From Octopus sinensis (Eukaryota), in NCBI RefSeq assembly GCF_006345805.1, contig NC_043010.1:36766001-36830000 (forward strand): 64,000 nucleotides of DNA, given 5' to 3'. The position numbers were made by a program, and so were the translations under genes. This document shows, one piece after another, positions 1,272 to 58,329 of this stretch. The notes below the pieces were generated by a model. The model saw nothing but the letters and a program-made list of their open reading frames with translations. It searched no databases and was not told the DNA's origin. The first letter of the stretch is position 1. Each line of letters opens with the position of its first letter.

Positions 1272-1670
<399 letters not shown>

Positions 1671-6441: not shown

Positions 6442-6639
<198 letters not shown>

Positions 6640-9928: not shown

Positions 9929-10559
9929 AAAGTTTCCAATCCAGGGGGCAACAGGATAAGGCTTAAGTGAGTGTATGTGTAGATGTTCCTCCTGTGCAAA
10001 TAACCTTTATAACACATACAGATTATCAAAGTCAGTGCAAAAACCAAGGTGACAGAAAGACCAGAGAAGTGTGTGGTAGAGAGAGAGAGAGAGAGAGAGA
10101 GAGAGCATGAGACAGTCAACCTTAATGACAAATATTCTGGAAAACTAGAACACAATAAAATACATGCTCAGTGAAGCTAGAGTGCTCTACTTTCAACCAG
10201 ATACAGGAAGTAATGAATTCAATCAGGCGTGAACTTCTGCCAAAACTTGATATAGTTTCTATTGCATTGTACACATACACACAAGGAAGATTGTTAATGA
10301 ATAGAGGTTTTTTTTTTTTAATTCTTTTTCATTTTTGTTTTTCTTCAGTTTTTCCCCATTATACCTATCTCACCAACAGATAATAGCATAAACCAACAAA
10401 AGGAGTCACTAACTACACAGCTGCCAGACACAAATTTTCCACATGTAAGTGAGAAACTTGGGGCATGATAGAATGGTCTGGCCAGTTAATGCAAAAAGAA
10501 AAAATGGCTCTCTGGTACATATTGAGTACTTTTCCTGCAATTTGTACATCAAAACATTT

Positions 10560-11158
10560 CTTTTATTCCTTTACTTGTTTCAGTCATTTGACCATGGCCA
10601 TGCTGGAACACCACCATGAAGGGCTTTTAGTTGAGCCAATTAATCCCCCCAGGCTATATTTTTTAGACCTAGTACTTATTCTGTTGGTCTTTTTTGCTGA
10701 ACCACTAAGTTACAGGGACATAGGCACACCAGCATTGGTTATTAAGCAATGGTGGTGGAAAGGGCCAAACAGATGCAAAGATACAAATATACATACAAAT
10801 AAATATCACTTGCAGGTATGATGTGGGCGAACAGTAAAATTCTAAGACATCATCCACCTTCCTTGCATGAATCACAGTCATGGAATTTACTGTGGCAGAT
10901 TTTCTACAGCCAGATGCTCTTCCTGTTGCCAGCCCGCACATGTTTCCAAGCAGAGACTCATTTCCTATCATATGATAGGAACAAAAGGAAATACATACAC
11001 ACAAAGGATGGGTTTCTTTTATGTTTTTGTGCACCAAACTAACTCACAAGTCTTCAGCCAGTGTGGAGGCTTACAACAGAAGATAACTGCCCCCAAGATG
11101 CCATGCAGTGAGATTGAACCAGAAACCATGTGGTTAGAAAGCAAATTTGCAAACAGCC
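10560..11158 (-). mobile_element. SINE family A interrupted by an RTE-tail fragment
   Basis: SINE 3' half at ~10560-10800, insert at ~10820-10980, SINE head half at ~10990-11158. Confidence 0.7.
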
Positions 11159-14538: not shown

Positions 14539-14763
<225 letters not shown>

Positions 14764-17595: not shown

Positions 17596-18961
17596 AAAGT
17601 GGTGAGCTAGCAGAATTGTTAGCACGTCGGACAAAAATGCTTGGCAGCATTTCATCCATTTTTCCATTTATGCCAAAATTCTGCTACGGTCAACTTATTA
17701 ACCTTTCATCCTTTCAGGGGTTGATAAAAAAGTACCATAGAGGACAAGGTTCAATGTAATCAACTTATCTCCTCTCTCAAACTTGCTGGCCTTGTGCCAA
17801 AATTTGAAACCAATATTTTGTTCAACTATTTTATCCACATATCTTTTCTGTTTTTAGCAATTTTCTTCACTTATACTACATTTCCCACTGTGCTGTTGCA
17901 TTCTCAGAATAATTACACAGATCATAGTGCAATCATTCAGAAAATTACTTTTAAAGCAAGAGGAACAATGAGACATTTTAATTATGATGAACGGGCACGA
18001 GGTTGAATATTCACTGGGTACTTGCTGTGACCATCTCAACCACAACAAACACCAGTTTCTGAATAGCCTTGAATTCAGAGCAAGCGTAGAGTTGATAATA
18101 TTGACTTCATTACTCAAATGGTACTTATTTTATCGATCCTGAAGGACTAAACTGCTATTCAGAAGGTTTAGAGATACATCAATGTACAGCATAGTGGCCC
18201 ATAGTTTCTAGACTGAAAGCCCTTCAGAATAAACAGTTCAGTCAATTTTTGTTGAAGTGTTAAATCTTTCCAAGAACAACAACACACTTGTCCACCACTA
18301 GAGTTCAATGGAATTCAATAATCCATAGATGGCCATGTATACTCTCTGTATATGCTAGACACCCCGATGTTATGTTTGTAATTGGCCAAAGTCCAAACAT
18401 TTTGGAGATCATGTCCAGCAGCTGACAGAAATTTGTTTTATCAATCCAGGAACAGTGAAAGGCAAAGTCAAGCCTGATGAAATTTTGACCCCAAAGAGAT
18501 TTTAACTGAAAGCCTCAGGTGATGTATTTGAATACAGCAAGATGCTTTCAGCAATGCTGTTACCTTTTTGTCCAATCTACCACCATATCTAACAATAATT
18601 ATAATGTCAATAGCACACAAGTATGGTGTCTCATAAAAGAGTAATAGAAAGACAAAGCAAAAGATGAAGGAAACTAGAGAAAGAGAGAGAGAGAGGAAGG
18701 GGGTATAATATTTACTCATTTCCACTGAGAGAATTATGTAAATTAGGTGAGAAACAGTTGAGCTGTTTTTGTTTTGGATATCTTTATACTGTTTTGAAGT
18801 TGGTTAGATCAAAGATTATGATAGTAACACATTGTTTACACAAGAGAGAAGAAAAATAAACAGTGTGTGTGTGTGTATTGGATAGGCAGTGTGGATCAGG
18901 GTAGGGTAAATACAGAACAAAATGGAAGAGATAGTGAGAAGAAGAGAGGCAAGATTGTAGT

Positions 18962-25013: not shown

Positions 25014-25366
25014 TTAAACGTTGTGGAAATACTATCAAACGAATTAATAATGGGAATCATCTGCACCACAAAAATTCGTCAACAAATATATTGCATTAAG
25101 TAACACATTTTCATCACTGAACCACAGCTAAAATGTAATAAATAAAATAAGGAAAGAAAGAGAAAAAACTGTTTCTTTTTGAAACAAGTCAGTCAGTTAA
25201 AGAAAAATAAAGAAAGAAGAAAAAAATCACCAAAACAGAGGAAGATGGAAAAGAAAAATTACAACGGCAACATAAAACTGAGAAATGCAGGGGAAAAAAA
25301 TTAAACAACAAAATGAAATGGTTAGCTTTGATGATTACTGAAGAGCTTATAACTGTTCCAACTTAC

Positions 25367-25375: not shown

Positions 25376-25812
25376 CTGAGCAACAAGCACCAATCAGCAC
25401 AACAGTTTATTGTCCAAAGGTGGGACAAGAGGAGAGACAGAGAAAGAAAAATAAGGAGACAGAAATATATATATATATTTATATATAGACACAAACGGAA
25501 ATGGTTTATTGTTTTTTGTTTCGGATTTTTTTTTTTTTTATAAAAGAAGAAGAAAAAGAAAAGGAGAGAGAGAAGGGCATCAGAGACGTTAGAAAATGAG
25601 AGAAAGGAGACAGGAATAAGGTACTAATACATATATCGAAACAAAAAGAAATTAAAATAGAGTGTAAGAAATATAGAAACAGGGGTTATTAAACAGAATA
25701 TAAAAAGAGACAGGGTGGGGGCAAGAAAAAGATAGAATAAATAAAGAGCAGCACAATAGATAGAGCAAAGGCATTTTTTGATTTTAATAATGTAAACAAA
25801 TGACGAACATAC

Positions 25813-25863
25813 CCATATTATATGGCATTATGGACTTTCCGTTCAATGAGGCGTTCCAGTTAT
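25813..25863 (-). CDS. CtBP: CtBP cassette exon A (51 nt, phase 1-1): xNWNASLNGKSIMPYNM
   Basis: ttgcttttgcttgaactttttag|...ATGG|GTATGT. Open only in phase 1. Clear peptide paralogy with the exon at 34841-34879. Confidence 0.8.
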
Positions 25864-26379
25864 CTAAAAAGTTCAAGCAAAAGCAAATATGTACCCATTT
25901 CTCTTAAACCAATAATCAAATATATTTTTAAAACGGTTTCATTGTTTTTTTTCTGTCAGTTTGTATTATTATCATTTATTTATTTATGCAATACTTTGTG
26001 AAGAAACCACACCGGAGACTGACATAACACAACCAGGAAAAGAGGGGGAAAAGCGGGAAAAAAAAATTAAACCGGAAATAAGAGTGCAAACAAGTATGAA
26101 TTCAAAGATAATTTCTTACAACGGTATTCCAGTTAGGTTTGTTGTTGTTGCTGTTCTCTTGTTGCTTGCAATTTACACAATAAATGTAAATATTTTATAC
26201 AATAAATAAACTAAATATTTAGTTTATTTACACAAATGAAATATGTCTATGACAAGGCCCAAGTTGTTACATCTAGCCATATACGAATGCAATAAAATTT
26301 GAACACACACACACACACACACACTGTAGGCCACATTGTTTTCTTTTAAATTATTGTAGATTCCTATGAGAAATATCAC

Positions 26380-26690
26380 ATCAATGGATTAGCAAGTGTA
26401 TTTGGCTTCTGATTGCAAGGTCATGAGTTCAATTCCTGGTAGCGCATTGTATCCATGAGAACACTTTTATTTTGTGTTGCTCCAGTCCACTAAGCCAGTA
26501 AAAGCAAGTAGTACCAGTATTTCCAAAAGGCCAAACTGTCACATTCTATGTCACACTGAATCTCTCTGAGAACTACTCTAAGGGTTTGCGTGTCTGTGGA
26601 GGGCTTAGCCACTCGCACGTTAATTTCATGAGCAGACTGTTCCATTGATCGGATCAACTGGAACCCTCATCGTTGAAACCAAACAAGTGC
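26380..26690 (+). mobile_element. tRNA-derived SINE family C
   Basis: Head ...gagttcaattcc..., then gttgctccagtccact. Reverse remnants at ~340-440, ~33940-34110, ~57630-57750 and ~62480-62620. Confidence 0.6.
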
Positions 26691-27527
26691 ATCTGCACAG
26701 TTTCTGACAACCAAGTTTCACTGACACGGTTTTGACCAGCCTGAGGCTACGGAGAAAATGGTTAAAGTGTCACCATCCAGTGCAATGGAATCCAGAACAA
26801 AGTATTGCAAAGCACATGACCATACTTATACTCAAAAACTAAGTGACACCATCACTTCAGTCCAGCTATGAAGGCCAAAAAATAACAGAAACTTGCCACA
26901 AGGCAAGTGCATAGCAGGGGAGATCTTCAGAGGAAGAACTCCCATCTGACAAGTGTTTTGTCCCTTATACCTGACACTCTATAAGAACAAGGCCCACCCA
27001 GGTCATGACTCCTAAGTGTCCTCCTGCTGCTTTCTAAAATCCTGTCTCCAGCAGGATTTGAACCTGGATCATTTTTTTGTTCTTAGCTCTATGTTTCAGC
27101 CCACCAGACCACTCTGACTGACAAAGGAACCAGTATTCCCCCTTCCTTCTATTCTTGTAAATAACCAATGGAAATTCATAACTAAGTCTGTTGGTCATTC
27201 CTCTTCATCTATATCCACATTGAGGTCTTTTCAGCAACATCAGACAGAGAAAAAGGTGAGGGCAAAACAGATCACACACACACACACCTGTATAGAACTT
27301 TGTGTTTAGAATATCCCAATAAAAAAGGAAAAGTTTGGGAGAGAGAGACAGAGAGAGAGAGAGAGAGTATATATTTCAGACTGGATAGTATCAATAACTT
27401 TGAAATTGGTAAACAGAAATAAATTAAGGCACAGGTGTTATGATGTGTGTAGGAGAATTTTCATTAAAAATATTAGAGCATATGGATATTTTGCAATATA
27501 TTTTTTTATTACTAAGAGGCACAGAAG

Positions 27528-27565
<38 letters not shown>

Positions 27566-27991
27566 TATGAGATACATAATTGCACAAAGAATAGAGAGAG
27601 AGAGATAAGACAGAAATACAAAAAGATAGAGATGTGAAGGTGCATGTGTGGGTATAAATGTAGAGAGAGAGGGTGGCGGGGGAGAGAAACAGATAACTGG
27701 GAGGTACTTTCAGACCCCAATATTAGAGAGAGAGGGGGGGAGTAAACATCGAAGAAGCCTTAAGGAAACAAGACCAGGTGTTTTGGGAAAAAAAAATTTT
27801 AATTGTATAACCAGCCTTAAAAAACAGTGCAGCACATTGCTAAAATGCAGCAGAAGATGCACTAAACACTATCTGTTGCGATTAAAAGAACTATATTCCA
27901 ATTAAGCTGTTTTTCAAGATTATATCTTCAGCTCAAAACTGCAAAACTCAATTATTTTATAAAAAGATTAAAATATAAAAAGAAGCAACTG

Positions 27992-28005
27992 TAATAATAA
28001 TAATG

Positions 28006-28037
<32 letters not shown>
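27992..28037. repeat. (AAT)n microsatellite
   Basis: Direct inspection. Confidence 0.95.
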
Positions 28038-28487
28038 TGTAAAAAATTCATTATTTCTTAATTAATTTCCAATGATCTGGTTATCAATATGAGTTTATTA
28101 CAAAATAGAACACTCTGAGAGAACAGACAACAACTTTTTTTTATCAAATATTTGAAGCTTTTGAAATTTAATTATCTATTAACTATCTTTGGCTTTCATT
28201 AAAAAATTAAATAAATAAATGAACAACAGTAATAATAACATAAAAAGGTAATAATATTTTTGGCTGTCTCTGTTCAAAACAGCAACAACACCTGGTACAG
28301 AAGATGGTAAAACTTTAATTGGAAATTAATAGAAATTAAAAAATTTAAGTATTCGCTTGAGTGTGTTTGCGTGTACATAGATGTTTGTGTACAAACACAC
28401 ACGTATATATGTGTGAATGTATGTATGGCCTCAGCTGAAATTTTCATAACAGCCTGCAGAAAATTTCACAACTAGCAAAAATCTTAG

Positions 28488-28492
<5 letters not shown>

Positions 28493-28569
<77 letters not shown>
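28493..28569. repeat. (TA)n microsatellite. Other long simple repeats at ~3826-3872 (TA), ~9895-9926 (CA), ~11630-11710 (TA/TG), ~40358-40412 (TA), ~47044-47092 (CT/CA), ~50860-50917 (TA), ~54937-54973 (CA)
   Basis: Direct inspection. Confidence 0.95.
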
Positions 28570-28571
<2 letters not shown>

Positions 28572-30861
28572 GTAAATGAAATAATTTACGGACATAATTT
28601 CAATTTTGTTTTGAATGAAGATTATAACAGGAAGTAAAATTTATACTTGGAGATAATCTGGAGAAATATTTCTGGAAATTCTTAAAATTTCAGAATTACT
28701 CAGAAATTACATAACAAAACAAGAAGATTAGAAAGAAATTGAATAAAATGTTATTAGGAGGCGAGGATAGGTTACTATTTAATTTATTTCATTTCATTTC
28801 ATTCCAAAACCAAAGTTAAGTTTCTACAAAGTTTAGTTCCTTAAGTGAATTTAATTGATGGGCTCACATACACCTACGAGGACTCGTACATGTTTAAGGG
28901 GATTGGCAATGGGACTGCATGGCATTCATCCATTTGCTATATTAAAGAATTGTAGAAATTGGATGGCCAAGACCAGACGTAACCCTCTATTTTCCAGTAC
29001 ACATAGAACAATGTCTGAAGTAGGCATAACAGAGAAGGAAATACATTCTGGAAATGAAATAAAATAATTTATTTGATTTCACTAAGATTTGAACTCCCTA
29101 TTTTGAAACTGTAAGTGGTCAGCTGTCTTGGTATTTATATAAACACCTTTCATGATGAGGAGGGTGATGATGGTGCTCTTGAGAATTTCCTTTTTGACTG
29201 TTCAAAAGGGCCCTAATAACATTTTCATGGAAATGCTATTTATGTCTTTCCTCTCTAAAACATATGAGTACCATATTTGAAGGCATATAAGATACACCTT
29301 TCCTCTCCTAAAACGTCTCAAAATATAAGCCGCGCCCCACCACAACTCAATATGCAAAGCTGGGTTTCCCATAAGAGTTAATGCACAAAAGACATTCTTT
29401 TCTAGAATATGTGCTGGGGTGAGTCAAATATGCCTATGAATATTTTATACTGCCAAATACAGTTAAGTATATGAGCACACATTAGCATACATACTTTTGT
29501 GTTTACGGGTGCAGTTTTATAAAGGGAGATAGTGATATGAAACAGCGAGCTAACTCCTTTTCTCAGTGCATAACTCTTTTAAGACTGAAACACAAATTTA
29601 CCATGATCAATACTCTTGGCTGAACTTTTGACTTATACCACTCCCTGGAATTGCTGGCCTTGTGCCAAAATGTGAAACCAATATTTATATCATTCGTTAG
29701 TATGTTAACAGATTTATTTATTATAAGTAAACTGAGCCAATTACAGAGGCTCTAGTTAGCTGCTTCATCTGTTACAAATAGCAACCAAATACTGCTATTG
29801 ATCCAAAGCAACACACCACCAATATCATTATCAATGTGTTTGATCTCAATGCTGAGATGGGTTGAGCAGATTTAATGTCAACTTTCTGTGGCTGTCTCTT
29901 ATGATGCCTAGCAATACATGCATCCATCCTAAATGCCAGAATAGACATATGCAATATAAATATTCTAAGAATTGGAATAGGAAATGCTATACAATAAAAA
30001 AAAATTGTAGTTAAAAACACTGTACAGGAACAGTTTAATCTACAGCAATGAAGAACTGTACCAAAATCCTTGCCACCACCTCCGTTATGGACCATCTATC
30101 ATTAACTGAGAATTGGAATGAGGTAGGTAAAGAAATCTGCATGGAATTAGGAGAAAGGAAGGAGACTGACAATCAGAAGGTTCCTTTTTCATGTTGCTGA
30201 TGTTATTACAAGAATTTTCACACCAAAACTATTTACAAATTTCTGCTTGTATAAATATAAGCAAGCAGACACTCAGTTATGTTATCTGATTGTATGTCCT
30301 CCTTTATCATCACCATCATCATTCCTGCATCTTGTTGCAGCTAATTGTTCTCTTGTCCAAAGACTTTCATCATTCAATGGTGGCTGGGTAGTGTGGTATA
30401 GCAGTAAGTTCTTGGGGGAAAGAAAGAAAGAGACAGACAGAGAAAGGGACTGGTTCATGTAGTAGAGGAAAGAATCTAATTTCAAATGTCACAGCTTCCA
30501 AGTATATATAAAAATTGAAAGAAACTAAGAAAAATCAGTGAAGTGGCTAATGGTAGGAAGAAAAAGGAAGAAAATTGCCTGGGTGTGTTTCTGTGAAAGA
30601 GTGAGTGGGTGTATGGGAGAGCAGGTTTGTTAGTGTCTTGTCATCTGTCTGTATGCTCTACATGTGGAAGCTGAACCCCCACTGTGTTTTCATGAGTGTT
30701 TGTATCTGCAAGAGCAGATCTTTTGGTATGAGTATGTGATGTTCAAGTGTGTATGAGAACCTGTGTTTGAGTGTTGGCTTTAAAATGTGATGGTGGGCGA
30801 TGCATAGTAGTGAGACGCATGTGTAAGACATGATAAATTTAGATCAGTAAAAAGAACTTAC

Positions 30862-30870
30862 AGTGATTCA
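30862..30870 (-). CDS. CtBP: Candidate 9-nt CtBP microexon C (TGAATCACT, phase 1-1; adds V-N-H)
   Basis: Preceded by ~70 nt of AG-free, mostly pyrimidine sequence ending in tattag; followed by GTAAGT (30861-30856). In frame. No transcript evidence available. Confidence 0.5.
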
Positions 30871-33099
30871 CTAATACATTACATACAAAGTGGTTGAAAA
30901 TAAAAGGGGAGAAAAAAAAACGAGTGGTGAAGGTAAAAAGCAACTGAAAAGCAATTTTTGCAGCTTATTTTATATACAAAGGATTCAAAAGACGTCACTG
31001 ATCACTTTTTTTCTTTCTTTTTTTGGTTTCTAAAACTACTACAGAAATTGAGGTAGGAAAAACTTTGCTTGCAATTGACAAAAATGACGACCACACAAAT
31101 TGAAAATCATTTTTTTTTTTTTTCTAACCACATCAAGCATTGTCACAAAAGATACAATATCAATTACAAAAATTGCTAAAAACCAAAGGCTTGATGGCAG
31201 GGGATAGAAAAGATCAACCCCTCCTTATGAGAGGAACAGTTGAATAAAGAGGGTGGTAAGTCAGGTTTGTAATTCAAAAGGAGTATCTTTAATATTAAAG
31301 TTTGCATTTCAAAACTGACAGTTCAGTTTTGTTTTTAAATTTCTTTAATTAATGTTTTAATTAATTATGGAATTGTCCAAGTGGGTTGTTTTTTTTAAAC
31401 TTCAACACATTAAAAGAAGTAAAGAAATATTTCCCAATTAAATTTTCTCAACTAACTGACATATTTATATCATGCATTTGATGAACCATAATCTCACTGG
31501 TTAAAAACTTCCAACAGGATAATCACAGATTCACTGCATTTCCAGTGACAAGAGTGTGTCTTTGCAACGCGGGCAAAGTTAAACACCAAAAATGCACTAT
31601 TGCATCAGTTTCCTCACTGGTAATGTGTACATGTTTTACCAATAAATATCAGTAAAAGAACACATATATATACATACAAGAAGGAAGGTGACAGTCGCTT
31701 TGAAGTTTTGGCAAGCTAGCATTCGTTAGACAATCCAAAACTGTGAAGTCATGAAGTTAGCGACTCTTCTTGTAAAAGTCTAAAAGTATACTCTACAAAA
31801 AAAAAAAAAAAGTACTGAATAATTTTTCAGCTTAATGTTAAATTTTTATTATAACTTCATATCGAAACAAACAATACATATAAATGTGCATGAGCATGTA
31901 TATATTATATATGGGGAGCTTCCTCATAGTTTGCGCCTGGTATTGAGCATTATTTTCTGTGCATTCACTTGCTTTTATATGAAAAACCTGAACAGTATTA
32001 GATGTAATAGTTATGTTACAGTATCCTTGTTATCAAAGTCTATATTTGTCAGTTCAAAAATTACAGCAGATCTGTAAATGCTTTGGCAAAATTCAACAGA
32101 ATGATGATGTAAAATTTTAAAATTAACCTCCTCAACATTTTATTACACAAATAGAATCAACGCTTTTCAACTTTGCCTAATTAGATGCGTCTCTCATTAG
32201 TTAATTAATTAATGCCATTTGCTTCCGGATAGTACCACATTCTCTCTAAGCTATATACGAAGTGGCTGATTCAAGAGGGTAGTGATGCAAATGCAAATTA
32301 ATGCTAATTAGTTGTACAGTGATCCTGCTGCTTACAGAGATAAGCTGTAGCTTTGATGGCACTTGTGTTATAAAACAGAACTTGGTAGAGTGGATGAAAC
32401 ACGAGTTAAGATATCCTGGCCCATGATATCAATACCATATGGACTCAAGCCAACAAGGAATCCTCTACACAGCCACTCAACCAACATGAAATAAAAGCTA
32501 AGTCTTCCTCAAATTACACCAAACTCTCTTATATAGGAATGACACAACGGATAACATATTCCAACGCCTGAAAATCAAGACAGGAGGATGGTGGCCACAG
32601 CTTGAAAAGCTTTGATGAAGGCCTTCTAGATTTGTTTTGCAGGGTCTGTAAAAAAGGGCAGTACACAAGGCCTTCATAGGCTCTCAGAGATTAGCACAAG
32701 CCCCCTCTCCACCACATTCACCATATACAGTGACAGAATGGGTGATGAAATCAGGGAGAAAGGAGGCAAAAAGTGCCTCAGTTGCGGTGGCATGAGACTA
32801 GTTCCAAGGCACAGAAACCATTACTATAGGTAGAAAAAAAAATCAGAAAGATTGACAATACAGTGGGCTAAATGCTGGAACATGTCTGTGAGAGACTTTA
32901 TACTAGTCCGTTGAGTAGACATTCTTTGGATGAAGTTTACAATGTGCAGCAGCAGCAGCACTTTTACAAGCTTGAGGCCTAAACAATTATACAATGGACA
33001 AGGTCAAGTATGAGAGAGTTTAGTCTAGTGCAGTTATTACTGTTAGTGAGTCACTTCTCCCAATACAACCAATGATTTTAATTTCAAAATTAATTATTG

Positions 33100-33280
33100 G
33101 AGGCAAGGGACCTAATGGTAGACCACAAGCAAAATGGTTAAATTATATCCACAGACACAGTTGGTCACAATTAGGAATCCAGCAGCATGATGTAATGACA
33201 GTTGCTTTTGATAGAACCCCACTATGGAGGTGTCCTTTGAGGACTCTACACCCACAACCCTCCCAGGAATAGCAGGCAGT
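33100..33280 (+). mobile_element. RTE-clade LINE C-terminal fragment (second family)
   Basis: GKGPNGRPQAKWLNYIHRHSWSQLGIQQ...LHPQPSQE resembles RTE C-termini of the GKRPxGRPRxRW...WxRLG...LPPQPS type. Confidence 0.7.
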
Positions 33281-33369
33281 GAAAATGGAACAACAGATTA
33301 TTAACTGCTATTCATTATCATATATTTCTACTTAGTATTTTATCATTCTTCCTGCTATTATTATCAAAG

Positions 33370-33791
33370 CAGAATTGTTAGTACACTGAGTAAAATGCTT
33401 AGTGATATTTCTTCTGATTCTCTAGATTCTGAGTTCAAATCTCACCAAGGTCAACTTTGCCTTTCATCCTTTCAGGTTCAATAAAACGAGTACTAGTCAA
33501 GAGCTGGGGGTCAATGTAATTGATTTGTCTCCTCCTCTCAAAATTACTGGCACTGCACCAAAATTACAAAGAATTATTATCAATATTTTATTATTAAGAT
33601 GGCTAGCTGGCAGAATTGTTATTGTGTTGGGCAATATATTTTGCAGTATTATCTCCTGCTCTTTACATTCACTGTTCAAATCTCACCATGGTCAACTTTG
33701 CCTTTCAACCTTGCAGGGTTGATGAAATAAAGACCAATGTAATCGACCAGCTCCTACCCCTCAAAATTGCTGGTCTTGTGCAAAAATCTGA

Positions 33792-33830
<39 letters not shown>
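33370..33830 (+). mobile_element. Two tandem SINE family B copies with (AAT)n tail
   Basis: Same motifs as the 14990-16050 array. Confidence 0.8.
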
Positions 33831-33834
<4 letters not shown>

Positions 33835-34840
33835 GACTCTGCCACTGAAGATGACTTTTGCTGATCGACCTGCACAAAGGATTTGTTTATAGTGATCAAA
33901 TGTAAGTGCTGTACATTACCTCACTCCTTCCATCAAATCAATGTTACCTGAACAGGTGCATGGTGTGTCAGGTGTCAGAGTGATTGCAGAGCATTGTGAA
34001 ATGAAATGTCTTGCTCAAGAACATAATGCACCACCCAGTCTAGGAAATGAAACTATGATCTTGCGATCATAAGCACAACACCTTAACCACAAGGCTATGC
34101 ATCCTACTGGTTAGCATGTTATAATAATGATAATGGTGATGATAATTATTATTATTGTTATTATTACTATTATTACCAGTTTCACTGGACTGTAGCTGTG
34201 TTGAGGCACTACCTTTAGCAATACATTCGATTGCTTCAACCTCAAAATGAATCCAAACTGTACCTGAACAGAGAATGTAAAAGTATGCATCCAAACAGCA
34301 TGAAGTGTGTAGTGCAATGGCTCTACAAATTGTATTAGTCCTTTGGGGCTGTTGATTAGATTCCTTTACATGAATATGTCAATGCAGTTAACATTTGTCT
34401 TCACATCTCTTAATTCTCACTAGGTCTTGTACAGTTAGCATCAAACATCAGAGCCAAAATGGTGTCTGAAACTGGTTCAAACAACCACAAAGGACTTCTC
34501 TCTCTCTTTTTATTTTTTTAAAATTTATATTTAAACTGTTTAACAATCAAATTAAGAATAGTAATTTTTTATGTTTCAATTTAACAAGTATTTAAAGCTA
34601 AGCCTTCTAAATAAATAGAAAAAAAAAAGAGAAAAATAAAGGGAGACAAACTAAGAGGCTCTAATATCTAATATAAAAAGAAACACAGTGACTTACAAAG
34701 CCACAAATAATTTTATACAGGAAATAAAAATTCAAATAAATAAATAAATAAATAACACAGTACAGTTACAAATTAATATCAACACACGAAGAAAAGAGCA
34801 CTGACAGACGATGGAGAATTATAGATAACAAACAACATAC

Positions 34841-34879
34841 CCATCACTGACTTCCCATTTATTGACGATGTCCAGTTTT
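34841..34879 (-). CDS. CtBP: CtBP cassette exon B (39 nt, phase 1-1): xNWTSSINGKSVM
   Basis: tttcctccttttcaaccttttag|...ATGG|GTATGT. 8 of 12 residues identical to exon A, with synonymous third-position differences. Confidence 0.8.
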
Positions 34880-37800
34880 CTAAAAGGTTGAAAAGGAGGA
34901 AATGACAGTAACAGACTTGACAATATTTTTATAGTGATGATGATCTCAGACAGGGTTGTTATTTTTTATAGTTTTTATTTTTATCCCTTTTTTTAAAAAA
35001 AGTTAGTAAATGCTTTCCATCATCTTCCAACACCACCCCTTTTTTAAAATTTTTTTTTTTACAGCAGCAGTCACAAAGAAATAGAAAATAACACCACATA
35101 CATTTTTTTTTTTTTTAAATACACAGTAAAATAAGACGCAAAGTAATGAAAATAGAGATCAGATTTATATAAGAAATTTTTAAACCTTCATCTATCGCGC
35201 TAAACCTACAACAGGGAACAATCTCCTATCCAGTAATTTGCAATTCTGCTCCATCTCTTTAAAGAATGTTTACATGCATGTGTGTAAGAGACCAGAGAGA
35301 TAGATAAAAAGACAGGTGCATGCGACTTTCACTTATTTACGATGGAATGTGTGCATGTACACATGTGACAGGTATATTCCTACCTATACAGCTACCCACC
35401 AAAATAATTCTTGTGGTGTAAATCTCAGTTATATTTTTGTTGTGTCTTGGGAAGAGTCATTACGCCAACTTAATCTGCACATTAAAAAAACAATTGATTA
35501 ACCAATTTAAGAATAAAGAACTGAAACTGAACCTGTGCATGTGTTGTTATTATTACTGACATAATGAATCCCCCAAGACAACAAAATTTATTTCAACACA
35601 TGAATTCACATCAAGAATCTTGCAAACCAAATACAACAACGAGGTCTGAGTTATGTTTTTTTTTTTCTTATCTTTTGCCTTTAAAACATAAGTTTGAACT
35701 ATCAAAGAAACTCAAAACTGATAAGTTTTCTGAAAATCAATGCTTCTTTTTTTGTTTTCTTATATTTACAACAGTCTCCATCAAAAAATGACTTCAATGC
35801 AGATACTCCTCAATCTGCCAGCAATGGCAGCCAAAATCTCTCGCAAAGCACACACAAAGAAATGCGAGACAATGTAACTTCTAGATACACTGCTTGACAA
35901 AAACACGGGATCTTCAGAGGATTTAGTTGGAGCAAACCAATGACAACAAACAAGAATATTTGCAAATATAACCAACCCATAAGACTTTCATTGTTCTCTG
36001 GTCATTGTTCAATGAAAAAACATCCTAAAAAACTATCGATTGACTATCTCTAAGATGCTTCATATATATATATAAAAAAGAAAAAAAAACTATTGATTAA
36101 TTGATTATCTGTAAGGTGCATCATAAAGAAAAATAGAATTTTTCACCCAGTATTCTAGGTCTTTGTTTACTTAGTCAAAACATGATTGTTAATTTGACAA
36201 AACATGGCAGTATTGCCCACGTCAACCTGTAGTACTTGCTTCCATCAGGAGACAAAAAAAATAAAAAATGGTGGGAAAACAATATCTAAAAATCAATGAT
36301 TTTTCTATTCTCTACCCTCAAACTGAAATATATATTCAACCTTGACAAATATACATTTGAACATTTTATATTTCAATAGATGTTCTGTTCATTTCCCAAG
36401 AGACAAATTCACTGAGTTATTTGTCAGTGTATCTCGTAAGAAAGAGACAAACAAGATGTGCACGTGTATGTGTGCATGTGCATCGTCTCTGTCACCATCC
36501 TTTTAATGTCCACTTATCAACCATCCTCACATGGGTCAAGATAAGATATTTTCAGGCAGATTTCCTACAGCCAGAAGCCCTTCCTGTCACTAACCATCAC
36601 TTATTTCCAAGATAATATTTCCCTATGGCCAGACATATTTAGATAAAAGATTGGAAATGAAGGCCACTACTTACATGATAGTAACAATCATATAAAACTA
36701 CCACCCAGTGTCAAGGCGAAGAGACAGTAACACACACACACGACACATTTCTTTGAAGCCACACCTGCGCCTTACATAAAATACACATACACAAGTAAAG
36801 CAAAATTAAATATTTCTTTCTCAATGCTGAATGAAATACAAAAACATTTGCACAACTTTACAAATATATCTATATAAGCTTGTCCGACAGACTTTAAAAG
36901 ATTCGAAAACCACAATTGACACTCTCAAGAGATTAAAGTAATTATTAATGACTGTCTCTATATTTTAGGTATGAAAGAAAGATTAGGAGGCCATCATACT
37001 TTTTCACAAAGGCTATAAGGTAACAAGTTGTCAAACAAGTGAAACTGAGAGCAACTGTGGGTTGAAACCATATCAAAAATTTACCTCATCACAAATGCAG
37101 CTCTTGTATTATAAGCATTGATCAAATATGATATTGATTTCTTTTCATAAATTGAGAATTTTCTTTCAGAAAAGCCTTTTGTGCATGTATGCATGTGTGT
37201 GCTCACTGATCGTTACTTTATCAATTCCTCAAAGGTAAAAATGATCTCAGAAAGATTTTGACGTAACAGCAAGTAAAACATCCCTACCACTCCTATCAGT
37301 TTAATATTACACTAACAGGCAGCAATTACACATGAATACACATGTACACACAAACAGGTCATGTTAACCATTTTGTTACGTTTCTAACACACTTACACAC
37401 AGCCTGTGAGTTTCAATTTATTTGAAATGGAATATTTCGAGGATTTGTTAAAATAGCTGTCACGCTTGCTTCTATTTATTAATACACAAAGCTAGAGTTT
37501 AGAATACAGCTTATAAAAAAAATTCTTCCATGAAACTATAAAGAAACAGTTACTCACTAAAGTATTGAAGAGTCAAGTTATCTTCTGATAATGAGATTGT
37601 TAACAAGATTTTAATTTAAATATATAAATAGTTGACTGGCAAAATTTGTACAGCATCAGGCAGGCAAAATATCTCATGGTTACATTCTTTTTGTGTTCAG
37701 TTAAAATCCAACCCACCTCAGTGTTGCTTTTCATCCTTCTGATGTTGATAATATAAAAACCAGTTCACAAGAACTGGAGTTAAAACATAATTAACTACAC

Positions 37801-40353: not shown

Positions 40354-40419
<66 letters not shown>

Positions 40420-40557
40420 CATATATCAGTCTACCAAATCCACTCACAAGGTTTTGGTCAGCCCAGGGCCATAGTAGAAGACATTTATTTGCCTAAGATG
40501 CCATGCAGTGGGACTGAACCCAGAACCATGCAATTGAGAAGCAAGCTTAGATATTTT
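40122..40557 (-). mobile_element. SINE family A, full length, with central (TA)n
   Basis: Head, core and tail motifs are all present. Confidence 0.8.
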
Positions 40558-41557
40558 AAGATACTTTTATTTTGGGATTGGCTATTGTTTCCTTTTCCTT
40601 TTATGCAAACTATTAAATTTAACCCAGAAAGCCTTGTATATCATTGTATATTCTCATCTAACATCTGTTTTCCATGCTGGCATGGGCTGGACTAGAAGAT
40701 TCTTAAGGCCCAAAATTTTGTGGAATTTGGACAGATTGACAAGAAACTGACAAGCCAAAGAACTGCGCCAAGCTCTACTGCCAGCTTTGACATGGTTTCT
40801 ACAGCTGGATGTCCTTCCTAACGACAACCACTTTACAGAGAGTACTAGATACTTTTTACATGGCACCAGCACTGACAGACTCACTAAGTAATTTACAAGA
40901 CAAAGACCAATCAACTAAAATGGAGAGGTGGCTTCATGTCTGATGATGAGAGATTAAACTATCACATCCACACACACACACACACACACATGAAGTTGAA
41001 GTCTCACTACTCGATCCCACCACTACTCAATAACTGAACAGATCTCACTTGCATTGAGTACTTAAAATGATTACATATATACAGATATGCAAATATAACT
41101 TCTTACAATTCATTTCTCTGGAGCTTATTCTAATCATAAACATCAAATATGAATCTAATTTACTCAACTGGAGTGACATATTGGCTTGTAGTTAACTGAT
41201 CATCAAAATTATCTGTGATCCTTGCATAATAAAGGATTAACTAATGCTGTTAGTAGGAAGCAACAATTGTTTAAAGCAATGTTTCCCAAACACTCTCAGG
41301 CAGCTGTCCCCTTGACACCCAGGCCACATTCCTACTGCCCTCACCCCAACTAACCATCGCAAACATAGACCTCTTTCTGAAGCAAATTGTATTTCATAAA
41401 TTAAACTTAAACCTAATGAACCCAAGGTTTTTCTTCTAAATCTGGTTTGTGTTAGTAAAATGTCTTTTCTTCGAGGATGATATGAATTAACATTGCGTTT
41501 TTTTTTAGCAAGATAAGGATGCTATTTCTTTGCTTCCAATTATATAACAATAATAAT

Positions 41558-50696: not shown

Positions 50697-50855
50697 CAGG
50701 TGCAGGAGTGGCTGTGTGGTAAGAAACTTCCTTCCCAACCATATGGTCCTTGGTTCAGTCCCACTGCATGGCACCTTGGGCAAGTGTCTACTTCTATAGC
50801 CTCAGGCTGACCAAAGCCTTGTGAGTGGAACTGGTACATGGAAACTGGAAGGAAC

Positions 50856-50921
<66 letters not shown>

Positions 50922-51110
50922 TGTGTGTGTGTGTATATATATGTATGTGTGTGTGTGTTAACCCCCACCACAACCGCTTGACAACCAGTGACAGTATGTT
51001 TACATCCCCATAACTTAGCGGTTCAGCAAAAGAGACCAATACAACAAGTACTAGGCTTACAAAGAATAAGTCCTGGAGTCGATTTGTTTGACTAAAACAA
51101 GTAAAAGAAT
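50697..51110 (+). mobile_element. SINE family A, near full length
   Basis: ggagtggctgtgtggtaag (A box), ggttcagtccc (B box), ggcaccttgggcaagtg, (TA)n, tail. Confidence 0.85.
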
Positions 51111-51179
51111 AGGAACACTGTACTGTGTATGAAATGTAAACTGGGGGGAATCAAGAGATGCCATTTGATCACAGGCTGG

Positions 51180-52803: not shown

Positions 52804-52843
52804 CTGGCTTGTCAAAACGAGCTCGTTTATTGCCGGGATCCAT
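52804..52843 (-). CDS. CtBP: CtBP first coding exon: MDPGNKRARFDKP + phase-1 G, containing a KRAR NLS-like motif
   Basis: ATG at 52843-52841 with an in-frame TGA six codons upstream; donor CAG|GTAAGA; phase 1 matches all downstream exons; locally GC/CpG-rich. KRAR parallels KRQR of vertebrate CtBP2 and KRSR of Drosophila CtBP. Confidence 0.85.
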
Positions 52844-52859
52844 GTGCAGCAGCTTTGTT

Positions 52860-53040
52860 CAGGTGTGGAGGGGGCCTTGTCGCTCGCTCCAGCACCACAC
52901 CACACCACCTCCAAAATATATAGTCCACCGCAGTTTTCACTTAAATCCACTCCAAGGATGCAAGACACCCTCAATCAATGATCTACCAGATTGGTTATGT
53001 GTTCAAAATTGATCAGGTGAATTCTTTTTCTCAGGTGATT
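52860..53040 (-). promoter_or_regulatory. Putative promoter/5' UTR of the NLS-containing CtBP transcript
   Basis: On the minus strand: CCAAT at 52994-52990 and a TATA-like TATATAT near 52923-52916, ~75 nt upstream of the ATG. No convincing splice acceptor upstream of the exon. Three CAGGTG E-boxes (52860, 53014, 53032). Confidence 0.45.
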
Positions 53041-53250: not shown

Positions 53251-53610
53251 CAGGTGCAGGAGTGGCTGTGTGGTAAGTAGTTTGCTTACCAACTACATGG
53301 TTCCGGGTTCAGTCCCACTGCATGGCACCTTGGGCAACTGTCTTCTACTATAGCTTCGGGCTGACCAAAGCCTTGTGAGTGGATATGGTAGACGGAAACT
53401 GAAAGAAGCCCATCATATACATGTTTGTCCCCACTCCCATCATCACTTCACAACCGATCTTCATGTAGTTATGTCCCCATAACTTAGTGGTTTGACAAAA
53501 AGATACCGATAGAATAGGTACTAGGCTTACAAAGAATAAGTTTGACGAAAGGTGGTGCTCCAGCATGGCCACAGTCAAATGACTGAAACATATAAAAAGA
53601 GTAAAAGAGT
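53251..53610 (+). mobile_element. SINE family A, full length
   Basis: Close to the family consensus from head to tail. Confidence 0.9.
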
Positions 53611-53619
53611 ATATATATC

Positions 53620-53982
53620 TTAACTTTTACTCGTTTCAATCATTGGACTACAGGTATGCTAGGGTATGACCTTGGATGGCTTTAGTCAAATATATTTACC
53701 ACAGTACTTATTTTTAAAATCTGATATGTATTCTATCAGTTTAAAACCTTTAAGTTATAAGGGCTTAAACAAACCAACACTGATTGTCAAGGGGATAAAC
53801 ACATATATACGTGTGTGTCTGTGTGTGTACACACACACACACACAAACGCAGGGAGTTTCAGTTTCCAAGGCTCTTATTGACCAGGACTATAGTAGAAGA
53901 TACTTGCTCCAGATACCATGCAGTGGGACTAAACCCAGAGCCATGTGATTAGGAAGCAAACTTCTTGCTACACAGCCATGTC
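53620..53982 (-). mobile_element. SINE family A, full length, tail-to-tail with the previous copy
   Basis: Reverse-complement head ends ...cttgctacacagccatg; more diverged than its neighbour. Confidence 0.8.
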
Positions 53983-57360: not shown

Positions 57361-57620
57361 CAGGTAGGACTGTATGGTAGGAATTTTACATCCCAACTAA
57401 TTGGTTCCCAGTTCAAACTCACCATGTGGTACATTGGGAAAGTGTCTTCTACTACATAGGCTTGGGCTGTCCAAAGCCTAGTGAGTGGATTTGGTAGAAA
57501 AAAACTGAAAGAAGAACATTGTGGTGTGCATGAATGATGCCTTTGGGTCTGTGTTTGTCCTCCACCACTGCTTGACAACCAATGTTGGTGTGTTTATGTA
57601 CCCATAACTTACTAGTTGTG
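57361..57620 (+). mobile_element. SINE family A, 3'-truncated
   Basis: Head and core motifs present. Confidence 0.75.
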
Positions 57621-58329
57621 AGAGAGAGAGAATTGCACCAGTACTCATTTTCAGCTGGGTGCATTAAAGAAAAAGGAAATGAAGTGCCTTGCTCAAGGAT
57701 AGACTGCACCACCTGGTCCAGAAATTGGATCCACAACCACTAGGTCATGCACCCCCCACACACACACACACACATTATCAGCAGCAAAAAGAGTCTTCAT
57801 GGGTAATTAGATATTAAGATGAAATTTACAGAAAAACAAAAGATGAAGACAGGTGTATACACAACAAGCAGATGTATTAGTTTGACGCTCAGGAAAGTGA
57901 GAAAGTCTACATTTCAAGCCAATGCTCTTCAAGAGAAAGGAACATGAGGAAATAAACAGAGAGAGAATATAAAAACTTGTGGATTTAGCAATCAATCATG
58001 GCGACTGAACTCTTCTTTCCTCATTCTTTAGTGAGAAGCATAAAAGTATTCCTTAAAAACAGTTTAAACAGCAGAAATCTAATCCTGAAAGGTTCAACCA
58101 AAGAAAACTAGCATACACTACTCACTATTTAACAACCTACCTTGGACAGACATGCACATAATACATACACATGAATCCTCCAACAGATTGCAATACTAGT
58201 TCATTTGTTCTAATATTAACACTTAAACCTTAAAATTTTTACCCATAAATTAGTCCATTATACATAAAATACAGAAGTTGTGAGCTGTTTACCAGCAGAA
58301 TACCAGATTATCCTGTAGGTTTGATCCTC

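What the first reader, a model, noticed from the sequence alone, without database searches (positions are those of the whole stretch)
25813..34879. Duplicated N-terminal cassette exons in CtBP (N-W-x-x-S-x-N-G-K-S-x-M module, twice)
Seen: two short exons 9 kb apart, B (39 nt, NWTSSINGKSVM) and A (51 nt, NWNASLNGKSIMPYNM). Both have a pyrimidine tract ending in TAG, an ATGG|GTATGT donor and phase 1-1. Eight of 12 residues are identical; three identical residues use different third positions (AAC/AAT, GGA/GGG, TCC/TCA) and three of the four substitutions are conservative (L/I, I/V, A/S). This is a coding-selection signature in otherwise repeat-filled intron. Known: vertebrate and fly CtBPs have a short N-terminal leader before the VR-P/G-x-x-NGP block; I recall no such repeated module, but cannot exclude an existing annotation. 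Inference: exon duplication produced a combinatorial or mutually exclusive linker between the NLS exon and the dehydrogenase core. With the two 9-nt candidates, all 16 inclusion patterns are in frame and stop-free, adding 0-36 aa.
Basis: partly seen in the sequence, partly recalled or inferred. Interest (0 to 1): 0.85.

Follow-up and report, generated by a model that had tools for sequence, protein, structure and literature searches.

The report
Duplicated mini-exons in octopus CtBP
Two short, related coding exons in the first large intron of an octopus CtBP co-repressor gene are real, date from before octopuses and cuttlefish diverged, and are already in public gene models; one is optionally spliced in, so the finding is correct but fairly ordinary.

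Summary
On the minus strand, exon B (34879..34841, 39 nt) and exon A (25863..25813, 51 nt) have the stated splice sites, phase 1-1 and peptides. They are each other's only relatives in the window.

They are genuine CtBP exons. Splicing exon1+B+A+exons 2-4 gives 213 aa identical to the start of Octopus vulgaris/sinensis CtBP models CAI9732932.1 and CAI9732931.1. The cuttlefish Sepia pharaonis has the same two exons in the same order. RNA-seq contigs there carry either A alone or B+A on an otherwise identical coding sequence.

Orthologues are closer than paralogues, so the duplication predates the octopus-cuttlefish split. Both exons are under purifying selection (dN/dS about 0.09). Exon B sits in a 151-nt block that is identical between two Octopus species.

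B and A are not mutually exclusive. No B-only transcript or 3-aa microexon variant was seen. The only models lacking both exons (O. bimaculoides) coincide with an assembly gap over exon A.

Best reading: A is probably constitutive and B is a regulated cassette. B adds a second copy of a 13-17-aa module to the N-terminal tail, ahead of everything that aligns to solved CtBP structures. The module's function is unknown. The exons are annotated in gene models but I found no published description. Interest is modest.

The parts
52804..52843 (-). Coding part of CtBP exon 1 (MDPGNKRARFDKP plus the first base of the next codon). It carries the basic KRARFD patch that aligns with the CtBP2-L KVKRQR nuclear localisation region. 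The donor is CCAG|gtaaga.
   Evidence: sequence. (spliced translation equals the start of P0123). (conserved with Sepia, including about 60 nt of 5'UTR up to 52903). PMC2995425 for the CtBP2-L motif.
34880..34931 (-). Conserved intron flank upstream of exon B, containing the polypyrimidine tract and acceptor and probably splicing-regulatory sequence.
   Evidence: These 52 nt are identical between this Octopus and O. bimaculoides. 34 of the last 36 nt are identical to Sepia, and the standalone BLAST hit is 45 nt at 89%. The same region of constitutive exon 2 is not conserved.
34841..34879 (-). Exon B, 39 nt, phase 1-1, encoding (E)NWTSSINGKSVM. It is an alternatively included cassette.
   Evidence: The orthologous exon is at L014 18776-18814. 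It is present in Sepia transcripts L001/L002 and absent from L004-L013, which are otherwise identical in CDS. pS is 0.47 and pN is 0.066 against Sepia.
34781..34840 (-). Conserved intron flank downstream of exon B: the GTATGT donor plus the conserved blocks GTTAT..ATAATTCTC and TGTCAGTGCTCTT.
   Evidence: These 60 nt are identical between the two Octopus species. The gapped alignment with Sepia keeps the blocks. The whole conserved block spans 34924..34794.
25813..25863 (-). Exon A, 51 nt, phase 1-1, encoding (D)NWNASLNGKSIMPYNM. It equals a B-like 39 nt plus a 12-nt extension (PYNM). It is probably constitutive.
   Evidence: The orthologous exon is at L014 25048-25098. It is present in every cephalopod transcript seen. 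It is 94% identical in DNA to decapodiform orthologues, against 83-86% for exons 2-4. pS is 0.23 and pN is 0.024.
25788..25903 (-). Conserved block around exon A (about 40 nt upstream and 25 nt downstream of the exon) shared with Sepia.
   Evidence: 116-nt alignment, 85%. (alignment detail).
14581..14738 (-). CtBP exon 2: (A)[25 protein letters not shown]...QEIHEK. This is where the conserved CtBP core begins.
   Evidence: Homology to solved CtBP1/2 chains starts here.
6465..6609 (-). CtBP exon 3 ([12 protein letters not shown]...AAGELG).
1409..1615 (-). CtBP exon 4 ([10 protein letters not shown]...GIVGL). The gene continues beyond the low end of the window.

Best explanation
The window holds the 5' half of the single CtBP (C-terminal-binding protein) gene of an Octopus species. 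It is about 90% identical to O. bimaculoides in introns, and its protein is identical to the O. vulgaris/sinensis models. In the 38-kb interval between coding exon 1 and exon 2 lie two genuine mini-exons, B (39 nt) and A (51 nt). They arose by tandem exon duplication before octopuses and cuttlefish/squid diverged. Each adds one copy of a module, [DE]-N-W-x-x-S-[IL]-N-G-K-S-[ILV]-[ML], to the N-terminal tail. The insertion point lies between the basic NLS-like patch (KRARFDKP) and the first conserved core residues (VRGPIPNGP). Exon A is present in every transcript seen and is probably constitutive. Exon B is a regulated cassette that is mostly skipped in Sepia transcript contigs. Splicing therefore sets the module copy number at one or two per subunit. 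Shown: the exons, their junctions, the homology, the age, purifying selection, alternative use of B, and conserved flanking intron. Inferred: that the conserved flanks and the low synonymous rate reflect splicing control of tiny exons in huge introns. Also inferred: that the module acts as a short linear motif or spacer that modulates nuclear import or partner binding.
For: Identity and structure. Spliced e1+B+A+e2+e3+e4 gives 213 aa, an exact prefix of P0123. Pfam 2-Hacid_dh and 2-Hacid_dh_C domains are present and solved CtBP1/2 structures match at E about 1e-187. Annotation. O. vulgaris/sinensis models P0123 and P0124 contain B+A. Sepia pharaonis model P0122 has B+A, and P0121, P0125, P0126 and P0127 have A only. 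Transcripts. Two RNA-seq contigs carry B+A. Ten listed contigs, of 14 on record for P0121, carry A only, and so does one contig from another decapodiform. The B+A and A-only coding sequences have 0 differences outside the 39 nt. All exons map at 98.5-100% identity (exons 1, B, A and 2 at 100%) onto the Sepia genomic locus in the order e1-B-A-e2. Age. A is 48/51 identical between octopus and Sepia and B is 33/39. My own count from the sequences gives 27/39 for A against B within octopus. Selection. pN/pS is 0.024/0.23 for A and 0.066/0.47 for B, with lengths and frames preserved. Exons 2-4 have pS of 0.64-0.70. The synonymous deficit in A is significant (Fisher p = 0.005-0.01). Regulation. Only six blocks are conserved between the octopus window and the Sepia locus, namely the six exons. 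The B and A blocks extend about 100 and 65 nt into the introns, whereas those of exons 2-3 extend 6-8 nt and that of exon 4 about 28 nt. A 151-nt block around B is identical between two Octopus species. Position in the protein. The cassettes (residues 14-43) lie N-terminal to almost everything that aligns to solved CtBP chains (alignments start at 41-58) and to the Pfam domains.
Against: No octopus transcript was examined directly. Inclusion in Octopus rests on gene models, some of which may be transferred annotation. Contig counts from assemblies are not quantitative, and the tissues are unknown. O. bimaculoides models omit both exons. I attribute this to the 209-N gap over exon A, but genuine skipping of both cannot be excluded, in which case A would also be alternative. 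The AlphaFold model was poor throughout (mean pLDDT 54), so disorder of the tail is not independently shown. Nothing here tests what the peptide does. No related motif was found in any other protein cluster.
Confidence: 0.8

Rival explanations
1. Fully combinatorial linker: A, B and further 9-nt microexons are each independently included or skipped, giving up to 16 N-terminal variants.
For: All of these exons would be symmetrical and in frame. O. bimaculoides models skip both A and B. Both A-only and B+A forms exist.
Against: No B-only form and no form with 3 extra residues occurs among the 10 protein isoforms or the 13 transcript contigs. Ten hypothetical isoforms, including B-only, skip-both in Sepia and A-only in octopus, are absent from the 15-billion-protein collection; this is a low-power exact-match test. 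No conserved island other than A and B exists in the three introns. The skip-both models coincide with an assembly gap over exon A.
Confidence: 0.1
2. Mutually exclusive exon pair: duplicated exons of which exactly one is used per transcript.
For: Tandem duplicates of the same phase are the usual substrate for mutually exclusive splicing (general knowledge; PMC5740500 appeared but was not read).
Against: Both exons occur together in two independent RNA-seq contigs and three gene models. B alone was never seen. Joint inclusion keeps the frame.
Confidence: 0.01
3. Chance similarity, pseudo-exons or fragments of a dispersed repeat inside an intron.
For: About a third of 500-nt intron chunks have other copies in the window.
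Against: The two exons are each other's only relatives in the window. They are spliced into transcripts. They are conserved with open frames across coleoids.
Confidence: 0.01
4. Both A and B are genuinely alternative in octopus: skip-both is a real isoform, as annotated in O. bimaculoides, giving a three-state switch of 0, 1 or 2 modules.
For: Four O. bimaculoides RefSeq proteins join exon 1 directly to exon 2. That join is in frame. Exon B is intact in that genome yet is also omitted from the models.
Against: Exon A lies exactly in a 209-N gap of that assembly: L015 30204-30412 corresponds to window 25944-25725. No A-less transcript is on record for any other cephalopod. With A included, the ancestral ...P-x-x-M-(A/S)-x-RGP context seen in other molluscs is restored.
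Confidence: 0.2

Closest known systems
Vertebrate CtBP N-terminal isoforms (CtBP1-L/S, CtBP2-L/S, RIBEYE)
   Same: It is the same gene family. Variation is created at the 5' end of the mRNA, in the N-terminal tail ahead of the conserved core. CtBP2-L carries a basic KVKRQR nuclear localisation/retention motif that aligns with the octopus KRARFD patch (PMC2995425; PMC9907507).
   Different: The vertebrate variants arise from alternative first exons, promoters or start codons, and they remove or replace the extreme N-terminus. Here, internal symmetrical cassette exons insert a repeated module downstream of the NLS-like patch. No sequence similarity to the vertebrate leaders was detected.
Tandemly duplicated alternative exons (exon duplication as a source of splice variants)
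   Same: The two exons are adjacent, on the same strand and in the same phase. They are homologous, including their splice-site flanks, and at least one is alternatively used.
   Different: Many such pairs are mutually exclusive substitutions. This pair is additive: the repeat number is 1 or 2. The two copies are of unequal length (39 nt against 51 nt).
Conserved regulated cassette exons / microexons with conserved flanking introns
   Same: Exon B is short and symmetrical. It has strongly conserved flanking intron, lies in a region with no homology to solved CtBP chains, and is skipped in most transcript contigs.
   Different: At 39 and 51 nt the exons are longer than the usual microexon limit of 27-30 nt. 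No tissue specificity or regulator is known. No stable local RNA structure is predicted.
Mytilus CtBP isoform X2 13-residue insertion
   Same: M. galloprovincialis X2 (P0014) differs from the Mytilus X1-type N-termini (P0011, P0013) by 13 extra residues (SMYNRDGNFNQKP). The position is essentially the same, between the NLS-like patch and ...[10 protein letters not shown]. The length equals that of exon B.
   Different: There is no convincing sequence similarity to the cephalopod module. The intron phase appears to differ (my inference from the protein sequences). Homology was not tested at the genome level.

Membership tests
CtBP (C-terminal-binding protein) gene | D-2-hydroxyacid dehydrogenase catalytic and NAD-binding domains, with high identity to characterised CtBP1/2 | tested here: met
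   Pfam PF00389 (1.8e-27) and PF02826 (1.5e-53) on the Sepia orthologue. Solved CtBP1/CtBP2 chains match at E from 1e-187 to 1e-174. The window exons translate to the exact N-terminal 213 aa of Octopus CtBP models.
CtBP (C-terminal-binding protein) gene | PXDLS-binding cleft and co-repressor activity | not testable with these tools
   This can only be inferred from about 80% identity to human CtBP across the core.
Tandem exon duplication | Neighbouring exons in one gene, on the same strand and in the same phase, with sequence similarity beyond chance | tested here: met
   Both are phase 1-1 on the minus strand with no coding exon between them. They are reciprocal best six-frame hits with score 53 against a shuffle maximum of 37. 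The similarity includes the acceptor (AAC[CT]TTTTAGA[AT]AACTGGA) and the donor (GGTATGTT).
Tandem exon duplication | Orthologous copies in other species are closer than paralogous copies, which dates the duplication | tested here: met
   A is 48/51 identical and B is 33/39 identical between octopus and Sepia. A against B is about 27/39 within octopus (counted). The order e1-B-A-e2 is the same in L014.
Mutually exclusive exons | Exactly one member of the pair is present in every transcript | tested here: not met
   L001, L002, P0122, P0123 and P0124 contain both exons in tandem.
Regulated cassette exon (exon B) | Transcripts with and without the exon come from the same gene; the exon is symmetrical; the flanking intron is conserved | tested here: met
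   L001/L002 and L004 differ only by the 39 nt. 39 is 3 x 13. 34 of 36 nt upstream are shared with Sepia, and a 151-nt block is identical between Octopus species.
Regulated cassette exon (exon A) | Transcripts lacking the exon exist | tested here: inconclusive
   The only A-less products are O. bimaculoides models, whose assembly has a gap over exon A. No A-less sequence was found for Sepia or other cephalopods.
Neural microexon programme | Length of 27-30 nt or less, and neural-specific inclusion | tested here: not met
   The lengths are 39 and 51 nt. Tissue specificity could not be tested because the tissues of the sequencing runs are unknown (one search found nothing).

The most novel reading that the evidence does not exclude
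The [DE]NWxxS[IL]NGKS module is a coleoid-specific short linear motif grafted onto an otherwise ultra-conserved co-repressor. Regulated inclusion of exon B doubles its copy number per subunit, from four to eight per CtBP tetramer. This would tune nuclear import or recruitment of a lineage-specific partner in particular tissues such as the nervous system.
Probability: 0.2. Interest if true: 0.45.

Novelty: new member of a known kind. Interest (0 to 1): 0.3.

Why it matters
CtBP is a deeply conserved bilaterian co-repressor. The main evolutionary survey concentrates on its C-terminal tail and discusses N-terminal diversity only for vertebrates (PMC9907507). This locus shows that coleoid cephalopods hold a repeated N-terminal module that is under purifying selection and is tuned by splicing. 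It is a tidy example of additive, not mutually exclusive, use of duplicated exons, and a candidate lineage-specific interaction motif. In practical terms, it also flags that the O. bimaculoides CtBP models are probably truncated by an assembly gap. It does not open a new kind of biology, and the exons are already in public gene models.

Tried and rejected
1. A third copy or dispersed-repeat origin. The DNA pattern search, the six-frame scan and the self-BLAST all found only A and B.

2. Relatives of the module in other proteins. A word search restricted to the cassette region returned only the cephalopod CtBP cluster.

3. Other isoforms. Ten constructed sequences (B-only, skip-both, A-only octopus, and others) are not in the collection. 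This is an exact-match test with low power.

4. Extra conserved microexons. Octopus-Sepia intron comparisons gave only two marginal hits of 26-28 nt in AT-rich sequence (E = 0.01-0.05). I treat these as chance.

5. Structure prediction of the Sepia B+A protein. The model was poor overall (mean pLDDT 54, and below 50 for residues 1-110), so it says nothing specific about the cassettes.

6. Local RNA structure around each exon. The z-scores were +1.0 and +1.6, meaning no stable structure, so structure does not explain the nucleotide conservation.

7. Literature. No paper in the library links CtBP to cephalopods beyond passing mentions. A search on the SRR accession prefix of several of the Sepia runs did not identify their tissues.

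8. Resemblance of xxS[LI]NGK to the PXDLS-type CtBP ligand motif. From memory it fails at several required positions, so I dropped it as a claim.

9. Genomic look-ups for P0123, P0124 and P0002 found no record.
Full report
**What is in the sequence**

I read both sites on the minus strand.

- Exon B is 34879..34841 (39 nt). It is preceded by a pyrimidine tract ending in TAG and followed by GTATGT. It encodes (E)NWTSSINGKSVM.
- Exon A is 25863..25813 (51 nt). It has the same kind of acceptor and the same ATGG|GTATGT donor. It encodes (D)NWNASLNGKSIMPYNM.
- Both are phase 1-1.
- A equals a B-like 39 nt plus a 12-nt extension (CCATATAATATG, giving PYNM) placed just before the shared donor.

The similarity is not chance and not a repeat family.

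- A degenerate DNA pattern finds only these two sites, against none in 100 shuffles.
- In a six-frame BLOSUM62 scan the two peptides are reciprocal best hits with score 53. The next hit scores 28 and the best of 100 shuffles scores 37.
- Sequence 300 nt either side of each exon has no other significant match in the window. About a third of the surrounding intron does.
- Between the two paralogues, similarity covers the exon, about 12-15 nt at the acceptor and the first bases of the donor, and not the wider flanks.

**The gene**

The window carries the 5' half of a CtBP gene on the minus strand.

| Exon | Coordinates | Note |
|---|---|---|
| Exon 1 (coding part) | 52843..52804 | MDPGNKRARFDKP |
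| Exon B | 34879..34841 | cassette |
| Exon A | 25863..25813 | |
| Exon 2 | 14738..14581 | [15 protein letters not shown]... |
| Exon 3 | 6609..6465 | |
| Exon 4 | 1615..1409 | |

Joined together, these exons give 213 residues that are an exact prefix of protein P0123. The Sepia orthologue has the two 2-hydroxyacid dehydrogenase Pfam domains. It matches solved CtBP1/CtBP2 chains at E down to 1e-187, with alignments starting at residues 41-58, so essentially all of the cassette region (residues 14-43) lies ahead of them.

**Public sequences**

A search weighted on the N-terminus, followed by expansion of the two cephalopod clusters, gave ten proteins.

- Octopus vulgaris CAI9732932.1 and CAI9732931.1 begin MDPGNKRARFDKP-ENWTSSINGKSVM-DNWNASLNGKSIMPYNM-AAVRGP. 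This is exactly the window's e1+B+A+e2. UniRef lists each of these entries as n=2 within the genus Octopus; that the second species is O. sinensis is my inference.
- Sepia (Acanthosepion) pharaonis has one model with B+A (P0122) and four with A only.
- One further transcript, from another decapodiform that is 95% identical to Sepia in DNA, has A only (P0001).
- Octopus bimaculoides XP_014778065-68 have neither exon.
- A search restricted to the cassette residues found no other protein cluster carrying the module.

**Transcript evidence**

- Two RNA-seq assembly contigs (L001, L002) encode the B+A form.
- Fourteen contigs encode the A-only form P0121, of which ten were fetched.
- Outside the 39 nt of exon B, the B+A and A-only coding sequences have no differences over 1356 nt. 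They are therefore splice variants of one gene.
- The B+A transcript maps at 98.5-100% identity (exons 1, B, A and 2 at 100%) onto the Sepia pharaonis genomic locus L014. Exon 1 ends at 10040, B is 18776-18814, A is 25048-25098 and exon 2 starts at 30286.
- The same transcript maps onto the octopus window at exactly the predicted exon boundaries.
- This gives orthologous support for junctions e1>B, B>A, e1>A and A>e2. B>e2 was never seen.

**Age and selection**

Orthologues are closer than paralogues. A is 48/51 identical and B is 33/39 identical between octopus and Sepia. A against B is about 27/39 within octopus (my count). The exon order is the same in both genomes. The duplication and the 12-nt extension of A therefore predate the split between octopuses and cuttlefish/squid. 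From general knowledge that split is roughly 250-300 million years old.

Nei-Gojobori counts:

| Exon(s) | pS | pN |
|---|---|---|
| 2-4 | 0.64-0.70 | about 0 |
| B | 0.47 | 0.066 |
| A | 0.23 | 0.024 |

Both cassettes have dN/dS of about 0.09, with lengths and frames preserved. Exon A is also short of synonymous change compared with the constitutive exons (Fisher p = 0.01 and 0.005 for the two decapodiform sequences). Its DNA identity is 94%, against 83-86% for exons 2-4.

**Flanking introns**

Only six blocks are conserved between the whole Sepia locus and the octopus window, and they are the six exons.

- The blocks for exons 2 and 3 extend 6-8 nt beyond the exon in total, and that for exon 4 about 28 nt.
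- The block for B is 139 nt around a 39-nt exon.
- The block for A is 116 nt around a 51-nt exon.
- 34 of the 36 nt upstream of B are identical between octopus and Sepia. The same region of exon 2 shows no conservation.
- Against O. bimaculoides, where introns are about 90% identical, exon B sits in a 151-nt block of perfect identity. Exon 2 has only 16-17 identical nt on each side.
- No stable local RNA fold is predicted around either exon.

I take the conservation to reflect linear splicing-control sequence needed to define tiny exons in introns of 9-18 kb. This is an inference.

**The models that skip both exons**

The O. bimaculoides locus L015 has a 209-N gap at 30204-30412. The alignment to the window breaks there, between window 25945 and 25724, which is precisely over exon A. 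Exon B is intact in that genome. The only evidence that both exons can be skipped therefore comes from an assembly in which exon A cannot be annotated.

In addition, with A included the protein reads ...PYNM-AAVRGP. This restores the ...P-x-x-M-(S/A)-x-RGP context seen in most other molluscs and protostomes. That fits A being the constitutive exon.

**Verdict on the interpretation**

Correct:
- The exons are real and duplicated.
- They show coding selection.
- They form a linker between the NLS-like exon and the core.

Not supported:
- Mutual exclusivity is refuted.
- The 16-pattern combinatorial scheme and the 9-nt candidates have no support. No isoform has a 3-residue addition, no further conserved island was found, and constructed alternative isoforms are not in the collection.

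What is shown is a two-state choice, A or B+A.

**How it probably works**

Splicing sets one or two copies of a 13-17-residue module carrying an invariant Trp, Asn-Gly-Lys-Ser and a leading acidic residue. The module sits in the N-terminal tail, downstream of a basic patch that aligns with the CtBP2-L KVKRQR nuclear localisation/retention motif (PMC2995425).

I consider a short linear interaction motif, or a spacer that affects the NLS context, the most likely role. This is inference only. The AlphaFold model was too poor to help, and I found no published description. The main CtBP evolution paper treats N-terminal diversity only in vertebrates (PMC9907507).

**Novelty and score**

The exons are already in public gene models. 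Their relationship as an ancient duplicated pair with additive, regulated use is not described in the library I could search. The kind of event (tandem exon duplication giving an alternative cassette, and N-terminal CtBP isoforms) is well known. I rate it a new member of a known kind, with interest 0.3.

Noticed in passing
L015 30204-30412 (O. bimaculoides CM046614.1), corresponding to window 25725-25944: A 209-N assembly gap removes exon A from the O. bimaculoides assembly. Its RefSeq CtBP proteins (XP_014778065-68) lack both mini-exons, probably for that reason.
   Followed up: yes
Outside the window; P0124 and P0128 residues after ...IKQMRP: Octopus isoforms differ by a 17-residue insertion (VKVNSQNPGEFGNGASK) inside the NAD-binding domain, just before GAFLINTARGG. 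This is either another alternative exon or an intron-retention artefact, at a structurally sensitive place.
   Followed up: no
Outside the window; C-termini of P0002, P0123, P0126 (…SSKQISFL), P0127, and P0001, P0121 (long tail): Cephalopod CtBP has short and long C-terminal variants. This parallels the CtBP-S/CtBP-L forms described in Drosophila (PMC9907507).
   Followed up: no
P0014 versus P0011 and P0013 (Mytilus): A Mytilus isoform carries 13 extra residues (SMYNRDGNFNQKP) at about the same position as the cephalopod cassettes. The length equals that of exon B, but there is no clear sequence similarity.
   Followed up: partly
window 52844-52903 (minus strand): About 60 nt of 5'UTR just upstream of the start codon are 85% conserved with Sepia. 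The 91 nt upstream of the ATG are identical in O. bimaculoides. This could be a translational or promoter-proximal control element.
   Followed up: partly
window 10453-10818, 40390-40692, 50797-51150, 53351-53626, 57455-57739, among others: A dispersed repeat family recurs on both strands of the introns; its copies give similar pseudo-peptides such as ...HSQGFGQP... and ...FAEPLSYGD.... 26 of 76 intron chunks of 500 nt have other copies in the window.
   Followed up: partly
window 1389-1408 and 1616-1623: The conserved block around exon 4 extends about 28 nt beyond the exon in the comparison with Sepia. This is more than for exons 2 and 3.
   Followed up: no
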